Assembly (NCBI GenBank): GCA_965240325.2
Contig: OZ251228.1
Location: forward strand, 2,666,001 to 2,730,000
From: Rebecca billardiae RCC1528
Taxonomy: Eukaryota > Protista > Haptophyta
Reading direction: 5' to 3'
Length of the DNA stretch: 64,000 nucleotides
The notes below the pieces were generated by a model. It had not been told where the DNA came from, ran no database searches, and worked only from the letters and a program-made list of their open reading frames with translations. Positions 25,544 to 33,916 of the stretch are shown here, piece after piece; the first letter of the stretch is position 1, and every line of letters begins with the position of its first letter. The position numbers and the translations under genes are program-made.

Positions 25544-28500
25544 TCACATGTAGTACGGCTGCGAGGCTGGCTGCGGCGCCAGCGGCTGCGTCGCCGCCGA
25601 CGCCGTATTTGGGCTTCGCGCACGCCGCTGGCCCCGGCTGGCGGCGCCGGCGCTCGTCGACGACGCTGCTGCCTGCGACGGCGGGGCCAATGGTGCCAGG
25701 GACCGCGCGCCAGCTGCAGCCGGCGTCGTCGGCGCATCCTGCGTGGGCCACAGCTCGGCCGTGCGCGCGGGGGCGGCTCGTCTCCGCGTACGCGCCCGTG
25801 TCGCCGCAGCCACGGCCGCCGCCTCGCGCGACGCGGGCGCGCTCACCTCCGCCGCTCCGCGCGTGCCGTTGGCCGGCGTGTATCGCTCCGCTGCGCCGTT
25901 CGGCGTGGCGCCGCGCGGGGGCACCGCGTCCGCGAGCGGCGCCGCGGGGTACAGCTGCTTCGGCGGCCACGACCCGTCGTCCGGGCCGAGCGCGCGCTCG
26001 TCCGTCTCGGCCGCGTGCCCGCCGCTGTGCGCCGCGCGGTAGCCGCCCTCGCCCGGCCGCGCAAACACGCGCACCAGCGAGGGCGAGCAGTGCAGCTCGT
26101 CGTGCGCGTTGCGCGCGGTGTCGAGCATGAAGGAGATGGCCAGCCCCGAGAAGAGCGCCTCGTACACGGCGAAGAAGCAGCTCGCCGTCTGGTACCTGCG
26201 GCGCGCGCGGCGCGCCGGCGCGCGAGCGCGTCAGCGGCCTGCCGCGTGCGCGGCGCGCGGCGCGGCGCGCGCTCGCCGACTGGCGGCGCTTGGCGCGGGC
26301 GTGCGCCGCACGAGAGCACAAAGGTGACGCCCATCGGGAAGAGGAGGGAGGAGGAGAGGTCGATGCGCCCGCCGCTGCTGCCGATCACGAGGCCTGCCGT
26401 CGCCGCGGCCAGCGAGGCGACGGCGAACTTGAGCCTGCGCACGCGCAGTGGCGCGGGAGCGCGCGCGGCGTGCTGAGCGGCGCGGCCGCGCGCAGCCGCC
26501 GCTCGGCGGCGCGCGCGCGCCCGCGGGCGGGGCGGCCGAGCCGCCGCGCGCTGCGATCGCGCGCGCGCACGCGAAGAAGCAGATGTCGACGGTCTGCTGC
26601 GCGTGCGCCACGCCCACGCCCGGGTGGTGCAGCTGGTGGCTCCACGTCGCGCGCGTCGCGGGCAGCAGCCCCAGGTCGGAGCACACCACGAGCACGTACG
26701 CGTCGGCCGTGAGCGCGAAGAGACCGTCACAGAGCGAGGTGGCGGCGCAGCACGAGCTGAGCGGGTCCGGGTCTCCGCGCTCGGCGGAGGAGGTCGCGCC
26801 GAGGCGGCACGGGCGGAAGAGCCAGCCGAGCAGCCGCAGCGGCATGAGCAGCGGCAGCGCCACCGAGCCGAACACCACCGAGCCGAAGTGGTACCGCGCG
26901 ACGAGCGAGAGCACCGAGCTTACGCTCAGCTCGGGCAGCAGCATGCGCTGCGCCGACTCATCAAAGCCGCGCGGCCGCGCGCCGCCGCCGTCCGCCGCGG
27001 CGACGGAGGCGTCGTGCGGCTCGGGCAGGCTGGCGCGGAAGTACCACACGCTCGCGAGCCCGGCGGCGACGACGCGCAGCACGTGCTGCGCGAGCGAGAG
27101 CAGGAAGACGCCGGCGAGGCAGTGCGCGCCGAGCGCGCGCACGATGGGCGAATCAAACGTGGGCAGCGGGAATCCTCGGCTCGAGACGAGCAGCCTGCCC
27201 GCGGACGCGAGGTGGACGGCGGTCCAGAACCACCAGAGCAGCGCGCAGAGCGAGGCGAGCAGGCCGAGCGCGGGCAGCCCCTGCAGCGCGGGCACGTCGC
27301 GCAGCGGCCTGCCCACCTCCGCCATCGCGCCGCCGATCCGCTGCACGAGCGTGGACGCGGCGTAGAAGGCGCCGAGCGTCGCGCCGACCGTGAGCGCCAG
27401 GCACATGTACCCGGAGACGGCGAGCGCGTACCCGTAGCGGAACTCGGCCGAGTCCGGCGCGGAGAGGTGCTCGCGCATGAGCGCCTCGCCCAGCGCCCAC
27501 AGCGTGCCCGTGAGGCAGCCCAGCGCGACCAGCGCCACGAGCAGCGCGCACAGCGTCGTCCCGACCGGCGCGATCGTGAGCAGCGCGGACAGCAGCACGC
27601 TCAGCGTGAGCGCGCCCACGCTGCACGCGAGGATCACCTCCCAGCTCGCGCGCAGGTCGGCGGCGGTGTCGGCGAAGCCCTTGCCCGCCGAGCTCGCCGC
27701 GGCGCGCACGCGCTCGAGCCCCGCGTCCGACGGCCAGAACCTCCGCTCCAGCTTCGCCCCGCCCCACGCGTGCCGCAGGTCGGCCTCGAACACAGTCGGC
27801 TCGGGCGCGCAGTAGCCGTTGCGCTCGGCGGTGGCGTACGCGGGGAAGCAGCACCGGCCGTAGCCGGCGCGGCGGCCGTTGTCGCCGCGCGCGGCGCACG
27901 CGTCGGTGCACACGAGCGCGCCGGGCTCGAACCCGTCGCGCGTGCGCGCCGGCCTCGGGCACTCGCTCACGCAGATCCCCAGGTGCGCGGCCGGGTCGGC
28001 AAAGAAGAGAAGTGGCGTGGCGGTGCGGTCGGCGCCCGCCGACCAGACAGGCGCGACCGCGCGCGCGTTCGCGTCGTCGACGAGCAGCCGGCCGTCGACC
28101 TGCAGCGCGGGCTGGGCGGTGCCGCACAGGTCGAAGCCGTGGTCGAAGCCCGCGTGCAGCGCCTCCGGCCGGCCCACGATGAACGCCACCGTCGAGAGCG
28201 TGAGCAGCCCGCCCACGGCGAGCAGCAGCAGCAGCACGCACAGCACGTCTGTGCACTGGCGCGGCGAGCGGCGCGCGGCGAGCGCGCGGTACGGCGACCA
28301 AGGCCCGCCGCCGGGCAGGAAGGCCGAGGCGGAGCGCGCGAGCGGCGTGCTGCCGGGCGAGCGGGGCGAGGCGGGCGAGGGCGGCAGCAGGCCGCCGCCG
28401 AGCGCGCCGCCGAAGAAGCCGCGCGCGGCCGCGCTCGCGCCGCGCGCGTCGGGCGAGTGGAGTGAGCTGAGCGCGCTGGCCGCGTGCTCGGCGTCCGCCG

Positions 28501-31500
28501 CCGCGCGCTCGTCGTGGTCGTCGTGGTGCGCCTCGCCGTCGGAGTCGGCGTCGGAGCCGGCGGCGGCCACGTCGTCGCCGTCCTCGGCGGCGCGCCAGCC
28601 GTCCGCCGTCGAGAGCGCGGGCCGCTCCCCCTCCGCCCACACGCGCGCCAGCCACTGCCGCTTGGCGATCGCGTTGAGCACCGCGCTCGGCACGTCTGGC
28701 ACGAGCGCCGCCAGCCCGACCTTGCCCAGGATGACGGCGTGCTCGATGGCGATGAGGAGGAGCAGCTTGCCCGCGTCGTCGAGCTCGACCCACGAGTCCA
28801 GGTGCCGCGAGGTGAACGCGAGGATCGCGAGGTTGGTGAACACCGCGAGGTAGCCGATCCCGTCGAAGATGGGCAGCCACATGCCGATGCCCTCGACCAC
28901 GTGCACGACCGGCCGCTCGCGCAGCCGCAGCACCTTGAGCATGTCCACGCGCATCTCGACGAAGTTGTTGACGAGCACGATGAGCGGCGCGACGGGGAAC
29001 GCCGTGGCGAAGAGCGTCGCCGTGGCGAAGTCGAGCGCGAGCTCGTTGTACTCGTAGTACAGCGGCTCGGCCTTGGTGAGGCGCAGCTGGCGCGCGGCGC
29101 GCGGCTCGGGCGGCAGGCCGTCGGCCGCGCGCTGCGCCTCGCGCGCCTTCGCCTTGCGGTACGTGTAGAAGGGCTTGGCGCTCTCGACGGCCTGCGCGAC
29201 GGTGGCGTGCACGAGCACGAGCACGAGCACCTGCAGCCGCAGCTCGTCCATGCACGACTCCGCCACCTCGCCCGCCCACGTGGTGCACGGCTCGTTGTAC
29301 TCGACCCCAAACAGCACGTTGCGCCGCCCCTTGCCAAACGCAATGTAAAAGATCGCGAAGAACTTGTTGAAGAAGGAGAAGGCGGAGAGCTTGACGATGA
29401 GGTGGTCGCGGTAGCTCGCGTACGTGCGGTGGTTCTCCCAGTCCGTCAGCCGCTTGCTCGCGTAGTCGTACGTGTACCCCATCACCTCGATGAACGCCGC
29501 GTTGAGCGTGGCGGCCAGCAGCACGCCGCCGGTGCCAACGGTCGTCGCCATGAAGAAGCGGAACGCGAGCAGCGCGAGCGTGCACACGACGGTCACGCCG
29601 AGGAAGACGGTGATGATCGTGGAGGAGCAGAGCACGCGCGTGCGCGGCAGGCTCGACTCGACCATCTCGAGCAGCGGCGCCTCCACGTCCGCCGGCATCT
29701 CCTCGTCCGCCACGGGCACAAAGTCGCCCGAGGCCGAGTACAGGCCGCGCCTGAAGTCGCCCTCAAACTCGGCGCGCACGCCGGCGCGCCGCTGCTGGTC
29801 GGCCACGTCCCACTCGGCGGCGAGGGCGTTCTGCCGGCGCTTCCACGTCTCGACGAAGCCGGTGGCCCAGAGCATGAGCACGAGCGCGTACAGCGGCGTG
29901 AGCAGCGTCGCCGCCTCCGTGCTCACCCCTAGCTCCAGGCTGAACAGCACCACGCCCAGGCCTGCGGGCAGCCACAGCCCCTTGGAGAGCCGGAAGAGGA
30001 AGGCGAAGTAGAAGGCGTACTCGGGGCCGAGGTACCCCTCGATGCGGCGGAGCGGCAGCGGGTCCGCGCCGATCATCGAGCCCTCGCCCAGCCGCGCCTC
30101 CAGCCCCTGCCGCTCCGCCTCGTCGTGCAGCAGGTACACGCGCTGCAGCGAGCCCCGCTTGAGCAGCGCGCCCATGTCCAGACCGGCGCCGCCCTCGAAG
30201 CGCGCGGCGCTCAGCACGCGCTCGATGAGCAGCGCGCGCTCGGAGGACTGGAAGAAGCGCGCGCCGTCGCCCTCGCCGTGCCCGGACGGCTCGAACATGT
30301 GCGCGATCTCCTGCCGGAACGGCGTGAACCCGCCGCCGTACTCGGCGCGCAGCCGCAGCCGCAGCCGCGACTGCTCTGCCGCGCGCTGCAGCCGCGCCAG
30401 GCTTGCGCCCACGACGACCAGCACCTTCTCCGCGCCGTCGGACTCGGTCGCGCGCACCTTCTTCACGGCGAGGCCGACGCGGCGGAGCCGGCGCACCAGC
30501 TCGGCGCGGTTCGGCGCCGTCGCGCTCTCCTCCGCGCCCCTGCCCGCGCGGCCCTCCGCGCGCTCGGCCGCGCCGCGCCCGCCCTTGTGCGCGTACACCA
30601 ACACCAGGTCGAAGTGGGCGCGCCCGTCCTCGGGCGGAGGCGCGGGCGGGGCGGGGCCCGCGCCGTCGGCTCGCACGGCCGGCGGCGGCGCTGGCGCCGG
30701 CCCGGCCGCCGCCCCGGCCCCGGCCGAGCCGCTGGCCGCGCCGGCGGCGGCCTCGCGCCGACGGCGGCGCGCGGCCGCGCCCGCCGTCGGCCGCGGCGCG
30801 GCCTCGTCGGTGTCGGACGTGGCCGCGGCGGCGGTGCGCAGCGCGCCCGCGCCGTCGAGTGGCGACGATACCGGGCTCTCGCCCGCGCGCCCGCGCGGCG
30901 CCGCGTCGCGCGCGGCCGCGCCGCCCGCGCGCTGGCGGCGGCGCGCGGCCCGGCCGGCGGCGGCCGTGGTCGCGTCCGCGCCCACCCAGCGCTTCTTCGC
31001 CTTGGCCTCGTCGAGGCGCGCGAGGATGGCGGGCGTGGGCTGGAGGTCGGCGGGCTCGCGCCCCGCCACGTCGCGCGCGCCCACGTCCGCGCCCTGCGCG
31101 AGCAGCAGCTCGACGAGCTGGCCCTGCCGCTCCTGCACCGCCACGTGCAGCGCCGTGCGGCCGCTGCCGTCCGTCTGGTTCACGTTGGCGTTCATGCGGA
31201 GGAGGAGGCCGGCGCCCGCCTCGCTGCCGGCGTGGACGGCGAGGTGCAGCGCGCGCGCACCCGCGCGGTCCGCGAGCTCCAGGTCCGCGCCCGCCGTGAG
31301 CAGCATGCGCGCCACGCCCACGTGGTCCTCCGAGGCCGCGATGTGCAGCGCGCTCTGGCCCGCGTCGCTCACGACGTTGGGGTCGGCGCGCTCCTCGAGC
31401 AGGCGCTGCACCGCGGGCGCGTCGTCGGACTCGGCCGCGCGCACCAGAGCGGCGGCCCGGGCGCGCGGCCCCATGGGCGCCCGGCGCCGGCCGGCGACAG

Positions 31501-31534
31501 ACGAGCGGGCGCTGTCCGCGCTGGAGTCCACCAT
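25544..31534 (-). CDS. Ankyrin repeat - anoctamin (TMEM16) - choline transporter-like (CTL/SLC44) fusion protein; predicted introns 26435-26570 and 26196-26311
   Basis: Ankyrin: GQSALHIAA, ARALHLAV, GRTALHVAV. Anoctamin: IEGYLGPEYAFYFAFL, LTDWENHRT, FYIAF, EYNEL, FATAFPVAPL..NNFVEMRVD, GIGMW. CTL: RQCTDVLC..G.D..DLCG, RYHFGSVVFGS, AYV, VYEALFSGLAISFMLD. Start 31534 or 31474. Confidence 0.85.
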
Positions 31535-31579
31535 GTGCTCCCACTCGAGAGTCGAGTTTTGAGCTCGCCGGGCCGGGGG

Positions 31580-33916
31580 CTTCATCCGGTTGCCACATTA
31601 AGCCTTGACCACCTGCCACATTAAGGGCCCCGCGACCGGCTGCCACATTAAGGCGACCGGCTGCCACTATTAAGGATCCGCGCCAACGCGCGCACGGCCA
31701 CCGACACGCCACGCGCGGAGCGATGCGCCGACGGTCTTCGGCTCGGTCGCAAACGTCCTGAACCGCGCTGGCCTGTTCAGTCGCCCTTTGCTCGACGCAG
31801 TCGTGCACTGGCCGGCGGAGGCAGTGGCGCCGGGCGTCGGGAAGCACTTCGAGTTCCTCGGTGAGGCTGGCGAGCCCGCGCCCGACAAGAAGCAGCGTGG
31901 CGGCGCGCGCGCGCCGTGCTCGCGGTGAAGTACGTGCTGCTCGCAAAGGGAAAGCAGGGACACCTCGAACACTCGGTAGATGATCTCGCCGTGCTCGCCG
32001 CTGACGGCCAGCGTGCGAAGCGCGCTGCTGGCATACACGGCGTTGAGCAGGCCACCGTGAGAGAGTGCTCCGTCAGACCCGTGGCCAAGGCCCTTGTCGA
32101 TCAGCTGCGCTGAAGGGCGCGCGCAAGAGTGTGTACTGGAGGTCAGTTCCAGGCAGGCTCCATGTTGGCTGCAGCGCTGCGTCTGCGCAGCATGCCCCCG
32201 CACGCGCGTCTGCGGGCGCACGCCTGCGTTCATCTGCAACTTGCTCTCGAGCTCAGCCTTGAGCGCGCTCAGCGTGCCCTTCAGCAGCTCGAGCTGTTCC
32301 TCCTTGCGCCACGCGTCCGCGTGTGCTGCGAGTAGTTGCTTGTTCAGCGGCTGCACCTGCACCGCCGCGTGCTCGACGCTTGCCTCGACCACCTCAACAC
32401 GCACGCGCTCGCCGACGCGCTCCAGGGACTGCTGCGTCAGCTCATGCGCACAGTGGAGCGCCGGAGCGACACCTCCGCGCCGTCCTCCGCGCTTATCGCC
32501 AGGCTGGGCGCTATGGAGAGCTACACGTGCGCTGAGGGCTCGAGCCCGACGACGCGTACGCAGTTCACCTCGCTGTACGACGAACGCCACCTCGAGCGCA
32601 CGAGCGCATGCGTCTGCAGCGGGAGCACCGACGGCCGCTCCGGCAGGCTCGCCGCCGACTTCCCCAGTAGTAAGTAGCATATCAAAGTCGTCTTCGGTAG
32701 CGCGCGAGGCTGGCTACAATACGGTGATGCTACACAACATGGGTTGCGTCACGCGCAGCACCACATTGGTGGCCGGCAGCGGCGTACCATCGGCTGAGGT
32801 GTTCCTGAGTCACTGTTCCTCTGCAGAGGAACGTGCGCGCGTCGACGAGCACTTGCGCGCTCCGCGGCCTTCGGCACCTTGACATCATTGCGCGTGCGCA
32901 TGACAGGCGCGGATGGTTGCGCACTTGCGTTTCCGTTGGTGGCGCGTACGATCCGCGAGCACCGTCCGCCGGGGCCTTGCCATTGTCGACCTTGGACGGC
33001 GCACGGCGCACGGCGGCGCGCTCGCAGATTCGGTCGGGTAGCCCTCGCTGGACATGTGCTGGCCTCTGTTGCTCCGCTGCTCATCGGACCGGGTGCCAAT
33101 CAGTGGCCCACAACTGACGACCCGTGCGCCTGCCCCGCATGCTCGCACACGGGATGACTCAGCCTGGAGCCACCCCGGTCGAGATTTCGGGATGTCAAAG
33201 CAGTGGCCGAGCATGCGCGCAAGCGCTCTCGTCCGCATGGAGCGTGACCTCTACCGTTCTACCGTCTGAGCGTCTGCCGTCACAGGAGTCGGACAAGTCC
33301 CCAAAGCTGGGTGCAACCAGTCCCTCGGGAGTAGCCGCCAGGCCTCCCGCCACCACCGCAGCCGCGCCGCCCAGGGTTGTGAGTCCTGGGATTACCCGGG
33401 GTGGTCAGGCTGGCGCGCACGCTCGCGGAACCTTGGAACCCGCGCTCCCGCGCTGCGTCGCGTGTCACCCCTCGATCGTCGCCCCACCGCCACCTCTTCC
33501 ATCCCATCACCACCTGTTCCTCGACATCCTCGGCCTTCGCCGCAGCACCGACGCCCCCGCGCGCGGCCGCTGTGGCAGCGGGCGATCCGCGTGTGTTGCG
33601 CCGCCGCGCCGCCGCGCCGCCCAGAGTTGTGCAGCGCGGCCTGTGAGTCCTGCGAGCTGCCCTGTGTGGTCAGGCTGGTGCGCACGCTCGCGAACGCTTC
33701 GAACACTCGCTGCATAGCGTGTCGCCCCTCGATCGCCGCCCCACCGCCGCGTTTTCCTCCACGCACGGCGGCTGTCGCCGCCGCACGAGCGCCCCGGTCG
33801 CGGGCCGCGCGCGTTAATGTGGTGGCGGGATCCTTAATGTGGCAGTGGTCAACCGTCTGCCACATTAAGGCTTAATGTGGTGGCGGGATTCGGCTTAATG
33901 TGGTAACCGGCTGAAG
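31580..33916. mobile_element. TIR element with subterminal GCCACATTAAG repeats and a degenerate coding interior
   Basis: 25-bp TIR CTTCA(T/G)CCGGTT(G/A)CCACATTAAGCC at both ends, with 4-5 CCACATTAA copies per end. Internal imperfect direct repeat at about 33360-33490 / 33610-33750. TSD ambiguous (CCGG or GCCGG a few bases outside the TIR). Confidence 0.75.

What the first reader, a model, noticed from the sequence alone, without database searches (positions are those of the whole stretch)
25544..31534. Ankyrin-anoctamin-choline transporter-like triple fusion
Seen: a ~5-kb uninterrupted exon carries ankyrin repeats, a full anoctamin/TMEM16 module, a ~130-aa linker and most of a CTL/SLC44 module, which two small exons complete. 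There is no stop or intron-like sequence between the two membrane modules. Known: TMEM16 proteins are Ca-activated scramblases/channels and CTLs are choline transporters, normally separate genes; I know of no such fusion. Inference: physical coupling of lipid scrambling or ion flux to choline (or other quaternary amine) transport.
Basis: partly seen in the sequence, partly recalled or inferred. Interest (0 to 1): 0.7.

Follow-up and report, generated by a model that had tools for sequence, protein, structure and literature searches.

The report
Ankyrin–scramblase–CTL fusion gene, haptophyte family
This alga has one real gene that joins ankyrin repeats, a calcium-type TMEM16 lipid scramblase/channel and a "choline-transporter-like" (SLC44) membrane protein into one chain; haptophyte algae of two classes keep the same join, which ties the disputed CTL family to lipid scrambling.

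Summary
On the minus strand, one 5-kb exon (31585/31534 to 26571) encodes ankyrin repeats, a complete Pfam Anoctamin domain, a 131-residue acidic and Ser/Pro-rich linker, and most of a Choline_transpo (CTL/SLC44) domain. Two further exons (26434-26312 and 26195-25544) complete it.

An open frame alone is weak evidence here, about 10% by chance. Third-codon-position GC, however, stays at 0.93-1.00 through the linker. An independent read assembly matches the window exactly.

Fourteen 90%-identity protein clusters carry both the TMEM16 and CTL modules, most with ankyrin repeats too. The named ones are Diacronema lutheri, Pavlovales sp. CCMP2436 and Chrysochromulina tobinii. Linkers differ in sequence and length. 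All read in frame except the CCMP2436 copy, whose mRNA retains 34 nt at the junction. The fused anoctamin modules tested form one clade (support 99). In CCMP2436 a spliced transcript contig spans both modules.

This copy keeps five acidic calcium-site residues. The same-genome paralogue, which this scan found before on another piece (s1-360715), has lost four of them and the ankyrin repeats.

I found no paper describing the fusion. Two 2026 studies report no choline transport by CTL1, and one shows phospholipid binding and simulated membrane thinning. I therefore read the protein as a lipid-handling machine, not a choline-coupled one. No RNA run was listed for this organism.

The parts
25544..31585 (-). 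Whole gene as modelled: three exons and two introns. The start is ATG 31585 or ATG 31534 (Met18). The predicted product is about 1,912-1,929 residues.
   Evidence: There is an in-frame stop just upstream of 31585. The Diacronema lutheri relative starts at the equivalent place.
26571..31585 (-). Exon 1 (about 5.0 kb). It carries Ank, TMEM16, the linker and CTL helices up to the ...DICFFA motif.
   Evidence: GC3 is 0.93-1.00 in every 60-codon bin (0.90 in the first). The Logan contig L003 is 100% identical to window 31606-24143.
31055..31447 (-). Ankyrin repeats (ORF residues 47-177).
   Evidence: Pfam Ank_2, Ank, Ank_4 and Ank_5, E 4e-20 to 4e-13. The same N-terminal repeats occur in P0158, P0154, P0024, P0014 and L002.
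30113..30610 (-). TMEM16 cytosolic N-terminal domain (ORF residues 326-491).
   Evidence: Anoct_dimer scores 26.4 bits against a cut-off of 22. Anoctamin_N scores 18.8 bits, below its cut-off of 27.
28661..30043 (-). Anoctamin/TMEM16 membrane module (ORF residues 515-975).
   Evidence: PF04547 E 2e-93 over profile 1-459 of 460. The best solved relatives are TMEM16K 5oc9 (E 4e-34), then TMEM16F, TMEM16A and the fungal scramblases.
28943..29185 (-). Ca2+-site helices TM6-TM8. The acidic residues are P0001 E784, E828, E831, E860 and D864.
   Evidence: These align to the TMEM16F and TMEM16K motifs and are tabulated across the family. The Asn four residues before the TM6 Glu is Ala here.
28265..28660 (-). 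Linker of 132 codons: acidic, then Ser/Pro-rich, no Met, ending in the conserved W-[ST]-P-x-R-x-L motif.
   Evidence: GC3 is 0.985 in frame. The RSPGSTP motif is shared with P0003. The juxtamembrane motif is conserved in all fused proteins.
26571..28264 (-). CTL/SLC44 module, exon-1 part: the R-x-C-T-D motif, TM1, the Cys-rich ectodomain and about TM2-TM8.
   Evidence: PF04515 scores 50 bits. Profile A2 against the PDB finds human CTL1 at E 2e-18, colinear from CTL1 residue 23 to 561. The model gives Z 13.1 to CTL1 and 11.9 to PNS1.
26435..26570 (-). Intron 1 (136 nt, GTGCGC...GCGCAG, phase 2).
   Evidence: Reading through it gives Arg/Ala-rich nonsense and the GC3 frame shifts. The junction is confirmed by P0004.
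26312..26434 (-). Exon 2 (123 nt): a CTL helix, LKFAVASL...GVTFVL.
   Evidence: 58% identical to P0004 residues 519-558 with no gap. GC3 is 0.95 in this frame.
26196..26311 (-). Intron 2 (116 nt, GTGCGG...CCGCAG, phase 2).
25544..26195 (-). Exon 3: the last CTL helix (YQTASCFFAVYEALFSGL...), a low-complexity tail, and the TGA stop at 25546-25544.
   Evidence: It matches P0004, P0002 and P0158 over the first ~45 residues. GC3 decays below about 25860, so the end of the tail is uncertain.

Best explanation
Shown: this is one gene encoding one polypeptide of about 1,900 residues. In order it carries:
- four N-terminal ankyrin repeats;
- a low-complexity spacer;
- a complete TMEM16/anoctamin module with its five acidic Ca2+-site residues;
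- a ~130-residue acidic and Ser/Pro-rich linker;
- a complete 10-helix CTL/SLC44 module.

It belongs to an old fusion family seen so far only in haptophytes. The family is present in Pavlovophyceae and Prymnesiophyceae, and the fused TMEM16 modules tested form one clade.

Inferred topology: TMEM16 ends in the cytosol and CTL begins in the cytosol. The linker is therefore a cytosolic tether, and the Cys-rich CTL ectodomain faces outside or into a lumen.

Inferred mechanism:
- The TMEM16 part works as a Ca2+-gated lipid scramblase, possibly with ion conductance. Its closest solved relative is the ER scramblase TMEM16K.
- The CTL part is not a choline pump. It is a phospholipid-binding, membrane-thinning partner held next to the scrambling groove.
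- TMEM16 proteins dimerise through TM10, so the two C-terminal tethers leave close together. They would bring two CTL modules into the dimeric state reported to deform membranes most.
- The ankyrin repeats and the phosphorylatable linker would supply anchoring and regulation.
For: One frame, one gene:
- GC3 is 0.93-1.00 in all bins of exon 1 bar the first (0.90), linker included, and collapses only in the introns.
- There is no Met in the linker. A stand-alone CTL (L004) has its own Met about 25 residues before the R-x-CTD motif.
- An independent Logan assembly is 100% identical across the gene.

Conservation:
- Both membrane modules are in one protein in P0002, P0003/L002, P0005, P0008, P0014, P0024, P0154, P0158 and P0161-P0164. 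All but P0002, P0005, P0008 and P0163 also show the ankyrin repeats; in P0003 they lie in the upstream ORF of L002.
- Linkers run from 100 to 171 residues with divergent sequence, and all but CCMP2436's read in frame. The W[ST]PxRxL motif is conserved.
- GC3 stays high through the linkers of L001 and L002.
- In a FastTree tree of 140 anoctamin domains, the seven fused rows tested plus two fragments of fused genes form one clade with support 99.

One mRNA in a relative: transcript contig L006 aligns to the CCMP2436 genome with introns removed, and spans anoctamin, linker and CTL.

Calcium site: E784, E828, E831, E860 and D864 are retained.

CTL membership.

CTL as a lipid binder rather than a transporter: PMC13160678 and bioRxiv 10.64898/2026.10.02.755950.

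The cytosolic termini and the TM10 dimer interface are established TMEM16 and CTL structural knowledge, not tested here.
Against: - There is no RNA or protein evidence from this organism.
- The only spanning transcript is from another species. There the mRNA retains 34 nt at the junction, which puts CTL in the +1 frame. Module coupling may therefore be regulated or lost in some copies.
- The Asn of the TM6 Ca2+ site is Ala in the three copies checked (P0001, P0002, P0003).
- The CTL module is divergent. A single-sequence PDB search found nothing.
- Of the CTL1 polar network, only the R457 equivalent is clearly kept in the HMM alignment. Lipid binding as in human CTL1 is an extrapolation.
- The scramblase-versus-channel question cannot be read from the sequence.
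- The model of the CTL part is mediocre (pLDDT 71.6, TM-scores 0.2-0.3).
Confidence: 0.55

Rival explanations
1. The CTL module is a genuine choline, ethanolamine or other quaternary-amine transporter. The fusion couples head-group or osmolyte uptake to Ca2+-activated scrambling or anion flux, for example for phosphatidylcholine or betaine-lipid synthesis.
For: - The module is a Pfam Choline_transpo member.
- Older literature, summarised in PMC13160678, reports choline and ethanolamine uptake for CTL1, CTL2 and plant CherI.
- Haptophytes make choline-derived betaine lipids and osmolytes (my own knowledge, not tested).
Against: Two 2026 studies found no choline transport: PMC13160678 for CTL1, PNS1 and CherI in oocytes, and the bioRxiv preprint for CTL1 in cells and proteoliposomes. 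PMC13160678 finds the fold hard to reconcile with transport, and the preprint shows bound phospholipids.
Confidence: 0.2
2. One gene but two working proteins. The long disordered linker is cut, or alternative splicing or an internal start separates the halves. The modules would then act apart, and the fusion would ensure only co-expression and 1:1 stoichiometry.
For: - The linker is long, disordered and poorly conserved apart from its ends.
- In CCMP2436 the mRNA form seen retains 34 nt that breaks the frame between the modules.
- P0056, from a transcriptome, looks like a CTL-only product with its own Met 22 residues before the W-T-P motif.
Against: - In this gene the linker has no Met and no frame break.
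- The frame reads through in every other family member listed, despite free divergence in linker sequence and length. Selection acts on read-through.
- CTL needs its N-terminus in the cytosol, which the fusion provides.
Confidence: 0.15
3. Two neighbouring genes on one strand that happen to read through in G+C-rich DNA, or an assembly join.
For: - An open 132-codon stretch has about a 10% chance here, and the other same-strand frames of the linker are open too.
- No RNA evidence exists from this organism.
Against: - GC3 is 0.985 in the shared frame; only 2.6% of random windows reach that.
- The same join is kept in fourteen protein clusters and in two haptophyte classes.
- There is a conserved juxtamembrane motif.
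- An independent assembly is identical.
- A spliced transcript spans both modules in a relative.
Confidence: 0.03

Closest known systems
TMEM16K / ANO10 (ER Ca2+-activated lipid scramblase; PDB 5oc9) and fungal nhTMEM16/afTMEM16
   Same: - Full Anoctamin domain.
- TMEM16K is the best solved-structure match (E 4e-34).
- The TM7 E..E and TM8 E...D motifs and the TM6 Glu are conserved.
   Different: - N-terminal ankyrin repeats.
- The TM6 Asn is Ala.
- The C-terminus continues into a linker and a second 10-helix membrane protein. None of the solved TMEM16 proteins compared here is fused to a CTL module.
CTL1/SLC44A1 (PDB 7wwb, 9qu3) and yeast PNS1 (9f63)
   Same: - Pfam PF04515.
- The R-x-C-T-D start, TM1, the Cys-rich ectodomain and a colinear match to CTL1 residues 23-561.
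- The fold match ranks first (Z 13.1 and 11.9).
   Different: - About 15-19% identity.
- No free N-terminus.
- Most residues of the human polar lipid-binding network are not evidently kept.
- The family's function is itself disputed (PMC13160678; bioRxiv 10.64898/2026.10.02.755950).
Uncharacterised haptophyte proteins KAG8468294.1 and KAG8459200.1 (Diacronema lutheri) and KOO35990.1 (Chrysochromulina tobinii, labelled 'd chain transport protein')
   Same: - The same Ank-Anoctamin-CTL order.
- KAG8468294.1 is 51-52% identical along the whole length.
- They share one clade with this protein.
   Different: They come from other species and are database entries without any described function.
Same-genome paralogue P0002 (earlier finding s1-360715)
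   Same: Anoctamin-linker-CTL in one frame, 46-51% identical.
   Different: It has no ankyrin repeats. Four of the five acidic Ca2+-site residues are replaced (EYNEL becomes AMNAL; VEMRVD becomes NSMRGA). The copy in this window is the ancestral-type, Ca2+-competent one.

Membership tests
TMEM16 / anoctamin | Full-length match to the Anoctamin membrane domain above the curated threshold | tested here: met
   PF04547 scores 314 bits against a cut-off of 28, over profile 1-459 of 460. Solved TMEM16K, F and A match at E 1e-30 to 4e-34.
TMEM16 / anoctamin | Acidic Ca2+-binding residues on TM6, TM7 and TM8 (N/E, E..E, E...D) | tested here: met
   Five of six are kept: E784, E828, E831, E860 and D864. 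The TM6 Asn is Ala.
TMEM16 / anoctamin | Cytosolic N-terminal ferredoxin-like/dimerisation domain | tested here: inconclusive
   Anoct_dimer scores 26.4 bits (cut-off 22) with no separate stretch passing. Anoctamin_N scores 18.8 bits, below its cut-off of 27.
TMEM16 / anoctamin | Ten transmembrane helices | tested here: inconclusive
   A crude hydropathy scan finds 7 strong peaks in the module. The amphipathic groove helices are expected to be missed. No structure was predicted for this part.
TMEM16 / anoctamin | Ca2+-dependent lipid scrambling or ion conduction | not testable with these tools
   Needs a liposome scrambling assay or electrophysiology.
CTL / SLC44 (Choline_transpo) | Match to PF04515 above the curated threshold | tested here: met
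   50 bits against 26.9 for the exon-1 part, profile 28-255 of 326. The rest lies in exons 2-3, which align to intron-free homologues. Relatives reach profile position 325.
CTL / SLC44 (Choline_transpo) | N-terminal R-x-C-T-D motif, TM1, then a Cys-rich ectodomain | tested here: met
   Colinear HMM alignment to human CTL1 from residue 23. The Cys columns are invariant across the family.
CTL / SLC44 (Choline_transpo) | CTL1/PNS1 fold | tested here: met
   The AF2 model (pLDDT 71.6) ranks hCTL1 at Z 13.1 (235 aligned, rmsd 5.3), PNS1 at 11.9 and 7wwb at 11.1. The next unrelated chain scores 8.3. Foldseek's top hit is PNS1, probability 1.00, but TM-scores are only 0.2-0.3.
CTL / SLC44 (Choline_transpo) | Conserved polar network of the central cavity (human K454, R457, R476, K480, K491, K544, H584) | tested here: inconclusive
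   In the HMM alignment only the R457 equivalent is clearly kept. The alignment of the following loop is unreliable.
CTL / SLC44 (Choline_transpo) | Choline or ethanolamine transport, or phospholipid binding | not testable with these tools
   Needs uptake assays, native mass spectrometry or lipidomics.
Ankyrin-repeat proteins | Tandem 33-residue ANK repeats | tested here: met
   Ank_2, Ank, Ank_4 and Ank_5 all exceed their cut-offs over residues 47-177.

The most novel reading that the evidence does not exclude
The fusion is a 'Rosetta stone' for the CTL/SLC44 family as a whole. On this reading, CTL proteins are everywhere accessory subunits of lipid scramblases. They select phospholipid (or, in haptophytes, betaine-lipid) head groups and pre-thin the bilayer for a TMEM16 groove. 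The same partnership would hold between the separate TMEM16 and CTL proteins of animals, plants and yeast. That would explain the lipid and trafficking phenotypes of CTL loss.
Probability: 0.15. Interest if true: 0.85.

Novelty: new variant of a known kind. Interest (0 to 1): 0.62.

Why it matters
What CTL/SLC44 proteins do is an open question in 2026. The two most recent structural studies find no choline transport, an odd fold and bound phospholipids.

A natural fusion of a CTL to a TMEM16 scramblase, kept in two haptophyte classes, is independent genomic evidence that the two act on the same substrate, membrane lipid. It also gives a single construct in which this can be tested:
- scrambling with and without the CTL half;
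- scrambling with and without Ca2+.

The family provides natural controls: a paralogue with a dead Ca2+ site and no ankyrin repeats, and a species in which the junction is frame-broken in the mRNA.

Tried and rejected
- RNA evidence for this organism: the look-up of sequencing runs listed no run, so read laying could not be used. None was listed; that does not mean none exists.
- A metagenome scan with the junction alignment gave only one distant stand-alone CTL (L004, 21% identity). It served only as a comparison for a normal CTL N-terminus.
- A single-sequence PDB search of the CTL part was blank. A 5-sequence profile was needed.
- Exons 2 and 3 alone are too short for Pfam. They were placed by homology instead.
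The exons were searched separately by reference.
- L005/P0004, a spliced homologue, is 5'-truncated at CTL TM1 and says nothing about the linker.
- I considered 'open frame means fusion' and rejected it as insufficient: about 10% by chance, with other frames also open.
- I considered the oomycete protein P0010 (2374 aa, 6 matched stretches) as a possible non-haptophyte fusion. It has no CTL match.
- I did not predict the fused core. The tool returns no inter-domain error map, so the result could not have shown an interface.
- The 'haptophyte' label came first from earlier notes of the scan. My own support is that all named relatives are haptophytes, the nearest being Diacronema lutheri at 51-65% identity. 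The species itself was not identified.
Full report
**What is in the sequence**

The window is very G+C-rich, 57-78% per 2 kb. On the minus strand a single ORF runs from 31585 to 26231, 1784 codons. Pfam finds three things on its translation:
- Ankyrin repeats at residues 47-177.
- A complete Anoctamin domain at residues 515-975, covering profile 1-459 of 460 (E 2e-93).
- A Choline_transpo (CTL/SLC44) domain at residues 1421-1669, covering profile 28-255 of 326 (50 bits against a cut-off of 26.9).

There are also weak matches to the TMEM16 N-terminal and dimerisation domains. Between the two membrane modules lie 132 codons (28265-28660). They are acidic, then Ser/Pro-rich, with no stop and no Met.

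**Is the continuity more than chance?**

The open frame alone is weak evidence. Stop triplets are rare here (0.017 per position), so 132 open codons are expected about 10% of the time. Both other same-strand frames of the linker are open as well.

The codon signature is decisive:
- Third-position GC is 0.93-1.00 in every 60-codon bin of exon 1 except the first (0.90). It is 0.985 in the linker, in the same frame as both modules.
- Only 2.6% of random 132-codon windows of the window reach that value.
- It drops to 0.80, with the periodicity moving to another phase, exactly where homology says an intron begins.

An independent short-read assembly, Logan contig L003 from run ERR14847148, is 100% identical to window 31606-24143. 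No indel or stop is hidden in the linker at the level of assembled reads.

**Gene model**

- Exon 1 ends at 26571, after ...DICFFA.
- Intron 1 is 26570-26435 (GT..AG, 136 nt).
- Exon 2 is 26434-26312.
- Intron 2 is 26311-26196 (GT..AG, 116 nt).
- Exon 3 runs from 26195 to the TGA at 25546-25544.

An intron-free homologue, P0004 (48% identical, contig L005), reads straight across both junctions. Exon 1 aligns up to its residue ~518, exon 2 to 519-558 without a gap, and exon 3 from 560. The same holds for P0002 and P0158.

The start is Met1 (31585) or Met18 (31534). An in-frame stop lies just upstream, and the D. lutheri relative starts at the equivalent position.

Below about 25860 the GC3 signal fades, so the last ~100 residues and the stop are uncertain. 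The product would be about 1,912-1,929 residues.

**Relatives**

Four searches contributed:
- Three word searches.
- One exhaustive HMMER search of 1.84 billion representatives with residues 490-1655 of the protein.

Within the best 150 of 6,343 hits, my own domain scan found both modules only in P0001 (this gene), P0002, P0003, P0005, P0007 (a fragment), P0008, P0014 and P0024.

Cluster look-ups named them:
- P0024 is KOO35990.1 of Chrysochromulina tobinii.
- P0158 and P0154 are KAG8468294.1 and KAG8459200.1 of Diacronema lutheri.
- P0155 is KAJ1633640.1 of Pavlovales sp. CCMP2436.
- P0009 and P0156 are MMETSP transcripts.

A search from the Chrysochromulina protein added four environmental members, P0161-P0164. 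Pfam shows Ank + Anoctamin + Choline_transpo in P0158, P0154, P0024, P0014, P0161, P0162 and P0164, and in L002. The triple architecture is therefore the ancestral state.

Across the family:
- Linkers are 100-171 residues and diverge freely. All but the CCMP2436 copy read in frame.
- They end in a conserved W-[ST]-P-x-R-x-L motif before the CTL R-x-C-T-D start.
- GC3 stays high through the linkers of L001 and L002.
- In a FastTree tree of 140 near-complete anoctamin domains, the seven fused rows tested plus two ORF fragments of fused genes form one clade with support 99, and no unfused protein falls inside it. This fits a single origin before the two haptophyte classes split.

An oomycete protein with many matched stretches (P0010) has no CTL part.

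**Transcript evidence**

None could be had for this organism. No RNA run was listed.

In a relative the evidence is direct. Contig L006 (JGI 3300017285, 4,435 nt) aligns to the Pavlovales sp. CCMP2436 genome (L009, GCA_026770615.1) in collinear blocks with several introns removed. It runs from the TMEM16 N-terminal domain through the linker to the end of CTL. Both modules lie on one spliced mRNA there.

There is a complication, recorded under things noticed. In that species the mRNA and the genome carry 34 nt at the junction that put the linker and CTL in the +1 frame. The NCBI model removes them as a GT..AG 'intron', although they encode the conserved A-W-V-x-G residues.

**The two modules**

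TMEM16 module:
- The best solved relative is TMEM16K, an ER scramblase (E 4e-34), followed by TMEM16F, TMEM16A and the fungal scramblases.
- Five acidic Ca2+-site residues are kept: the TM6 Glu, TM7 E..E and TM8 E...D. The TM6 Asn is Ala.
- The same-genome paralogue P0002 is the gene of earlier finding s1-360715 (5,337 nt, on another piece). It lacks ankyrin repeats and has replaced four of the five acidic residues.

CTL module:
- A five-sequence profile finds human CTL1 (9qu3, 7wwb) at E 2e-18, colinear from CTL1 residue 23 to 561.
- An AlphaFold2 model of the exon-1 part (13 sequences, pLDDT 71.6) ranks hCTL1 at Z 13.1 and PNS1 at Z 11.9, above unrelated chains at 8.3 or less. TM-scores are low.

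**How it most likely works**

Shown: one chain, a conserved order, an intact Ca2+ site and a complete CTL.

Established knowledge: TMEM16 proteins have cytosolic termini and dimerise through TM10. CTL1 and PNS1 have ten helices with a cytosolic N-terminus (PMC13160678). The linker is therefore a cytosolic tether, and the two tethers of a dimer leave close together.

Literature:
- PMC13160678 found no choline or ethanolamine transport by CTL1, PNS1 or CherI, and a fold that appears incompatible with transport.
- bioRxiv 10.64898/2026.10.02.755950 found bound PE, PS, PI and PA, no choline transport, and membrane thinning in simulations that is stronger in the dimer.

Inference: the protein is a Ca2+-gated scramblase whose tethered CTL modules bind or recruit phospholipid and thin the bilayer beside the groove. 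The ankyrin repeats and the linker would serve anchoring and regulation.

A third option is that the halves are separated after translation or by splicing.

**Novelty**

Three literature searches on the fusion found no description. The proteins do exist in public databases as hypothetical or mislabelled entries, and this scan reported the paralogue earlier. This is therefore a new variant, a new architecture of two known families. This window holds the ancestral-type, Ca2+-competent, ankyrin-bearing copy.

Noticed in passing
L009:8440-8490 (Pavlovales sp. CCMP2436, MU631398.1); also L006:1800-1870 and L007: At the TMEM16/linker boundary of the CCMP2436 homologue, a 34-nt stretch (GTGGGTAC...GCGCAG) is removed as an intron in NCBI model KAJ1633640.1. 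It is retained in the JGI and MMETSP transcript assemblies. With it, the linker and CTL are in the +1 frame, and the codon-position GC signal switches phase right there. The stretch encodes the conserved A-W-V-x-G residues. It may be a micro-intron, a real frameshift or fission, or recoding.
   Followed up: partly
L001:2295-7631 (same run as the window; earlier finding s1-360715): Paralogue P0002 has no ankyrin repeats. It has lost four of the five acidic Ca2+-site residues of TMEM16 while keeping an open, codon-biased fusion frame. It may be a Ca2+-independent or regulatory copy.
   Followed up: partly
L007:594-749: A 155-nt, extremely A+T-rich retained intron sits inside the TMEM16 module of a transcript from a ~70% G+C alga. 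The sister contig L006 instead skips the ~95 residues holding the TM7-TM8 Ca2+ site. This suggests alternative splicing or a mis-assembly.
   Followed up: no
window:25544-25860 (-): The C-terminal tail of exon 3 loses the GC3 signature while another phase rises to ~0.9. A GTGAGC lies at ~25845. There may be a further intron, or the coding part may end earlier than the TGA at 25546-25544.
   Followed up: partly
window:22953-24470 (-): The downstream neighbour on the same strand is an AAA+ protein of the replication-factor-C small-subunit type (AAA, DNA_pol3_delta2, RCF1-5-like lid, Rad17).
   Followed up: no
window:31670-32680 (-): A 336-codon ORF directly upstream has moderate GC3 periodicity (0.87-0.90, changing phase) and no Pfam match. 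It is probably a separate multi-exon gene of unknown family.
   Followed up: no
P0024 = KOO35990.1 (Chrysochromulina tobinii): The public name 'd chain transport protein' looks like an annotation artefact. The protein is Ank + Anoctamin + Choline_transpo.
   Followed up: yes
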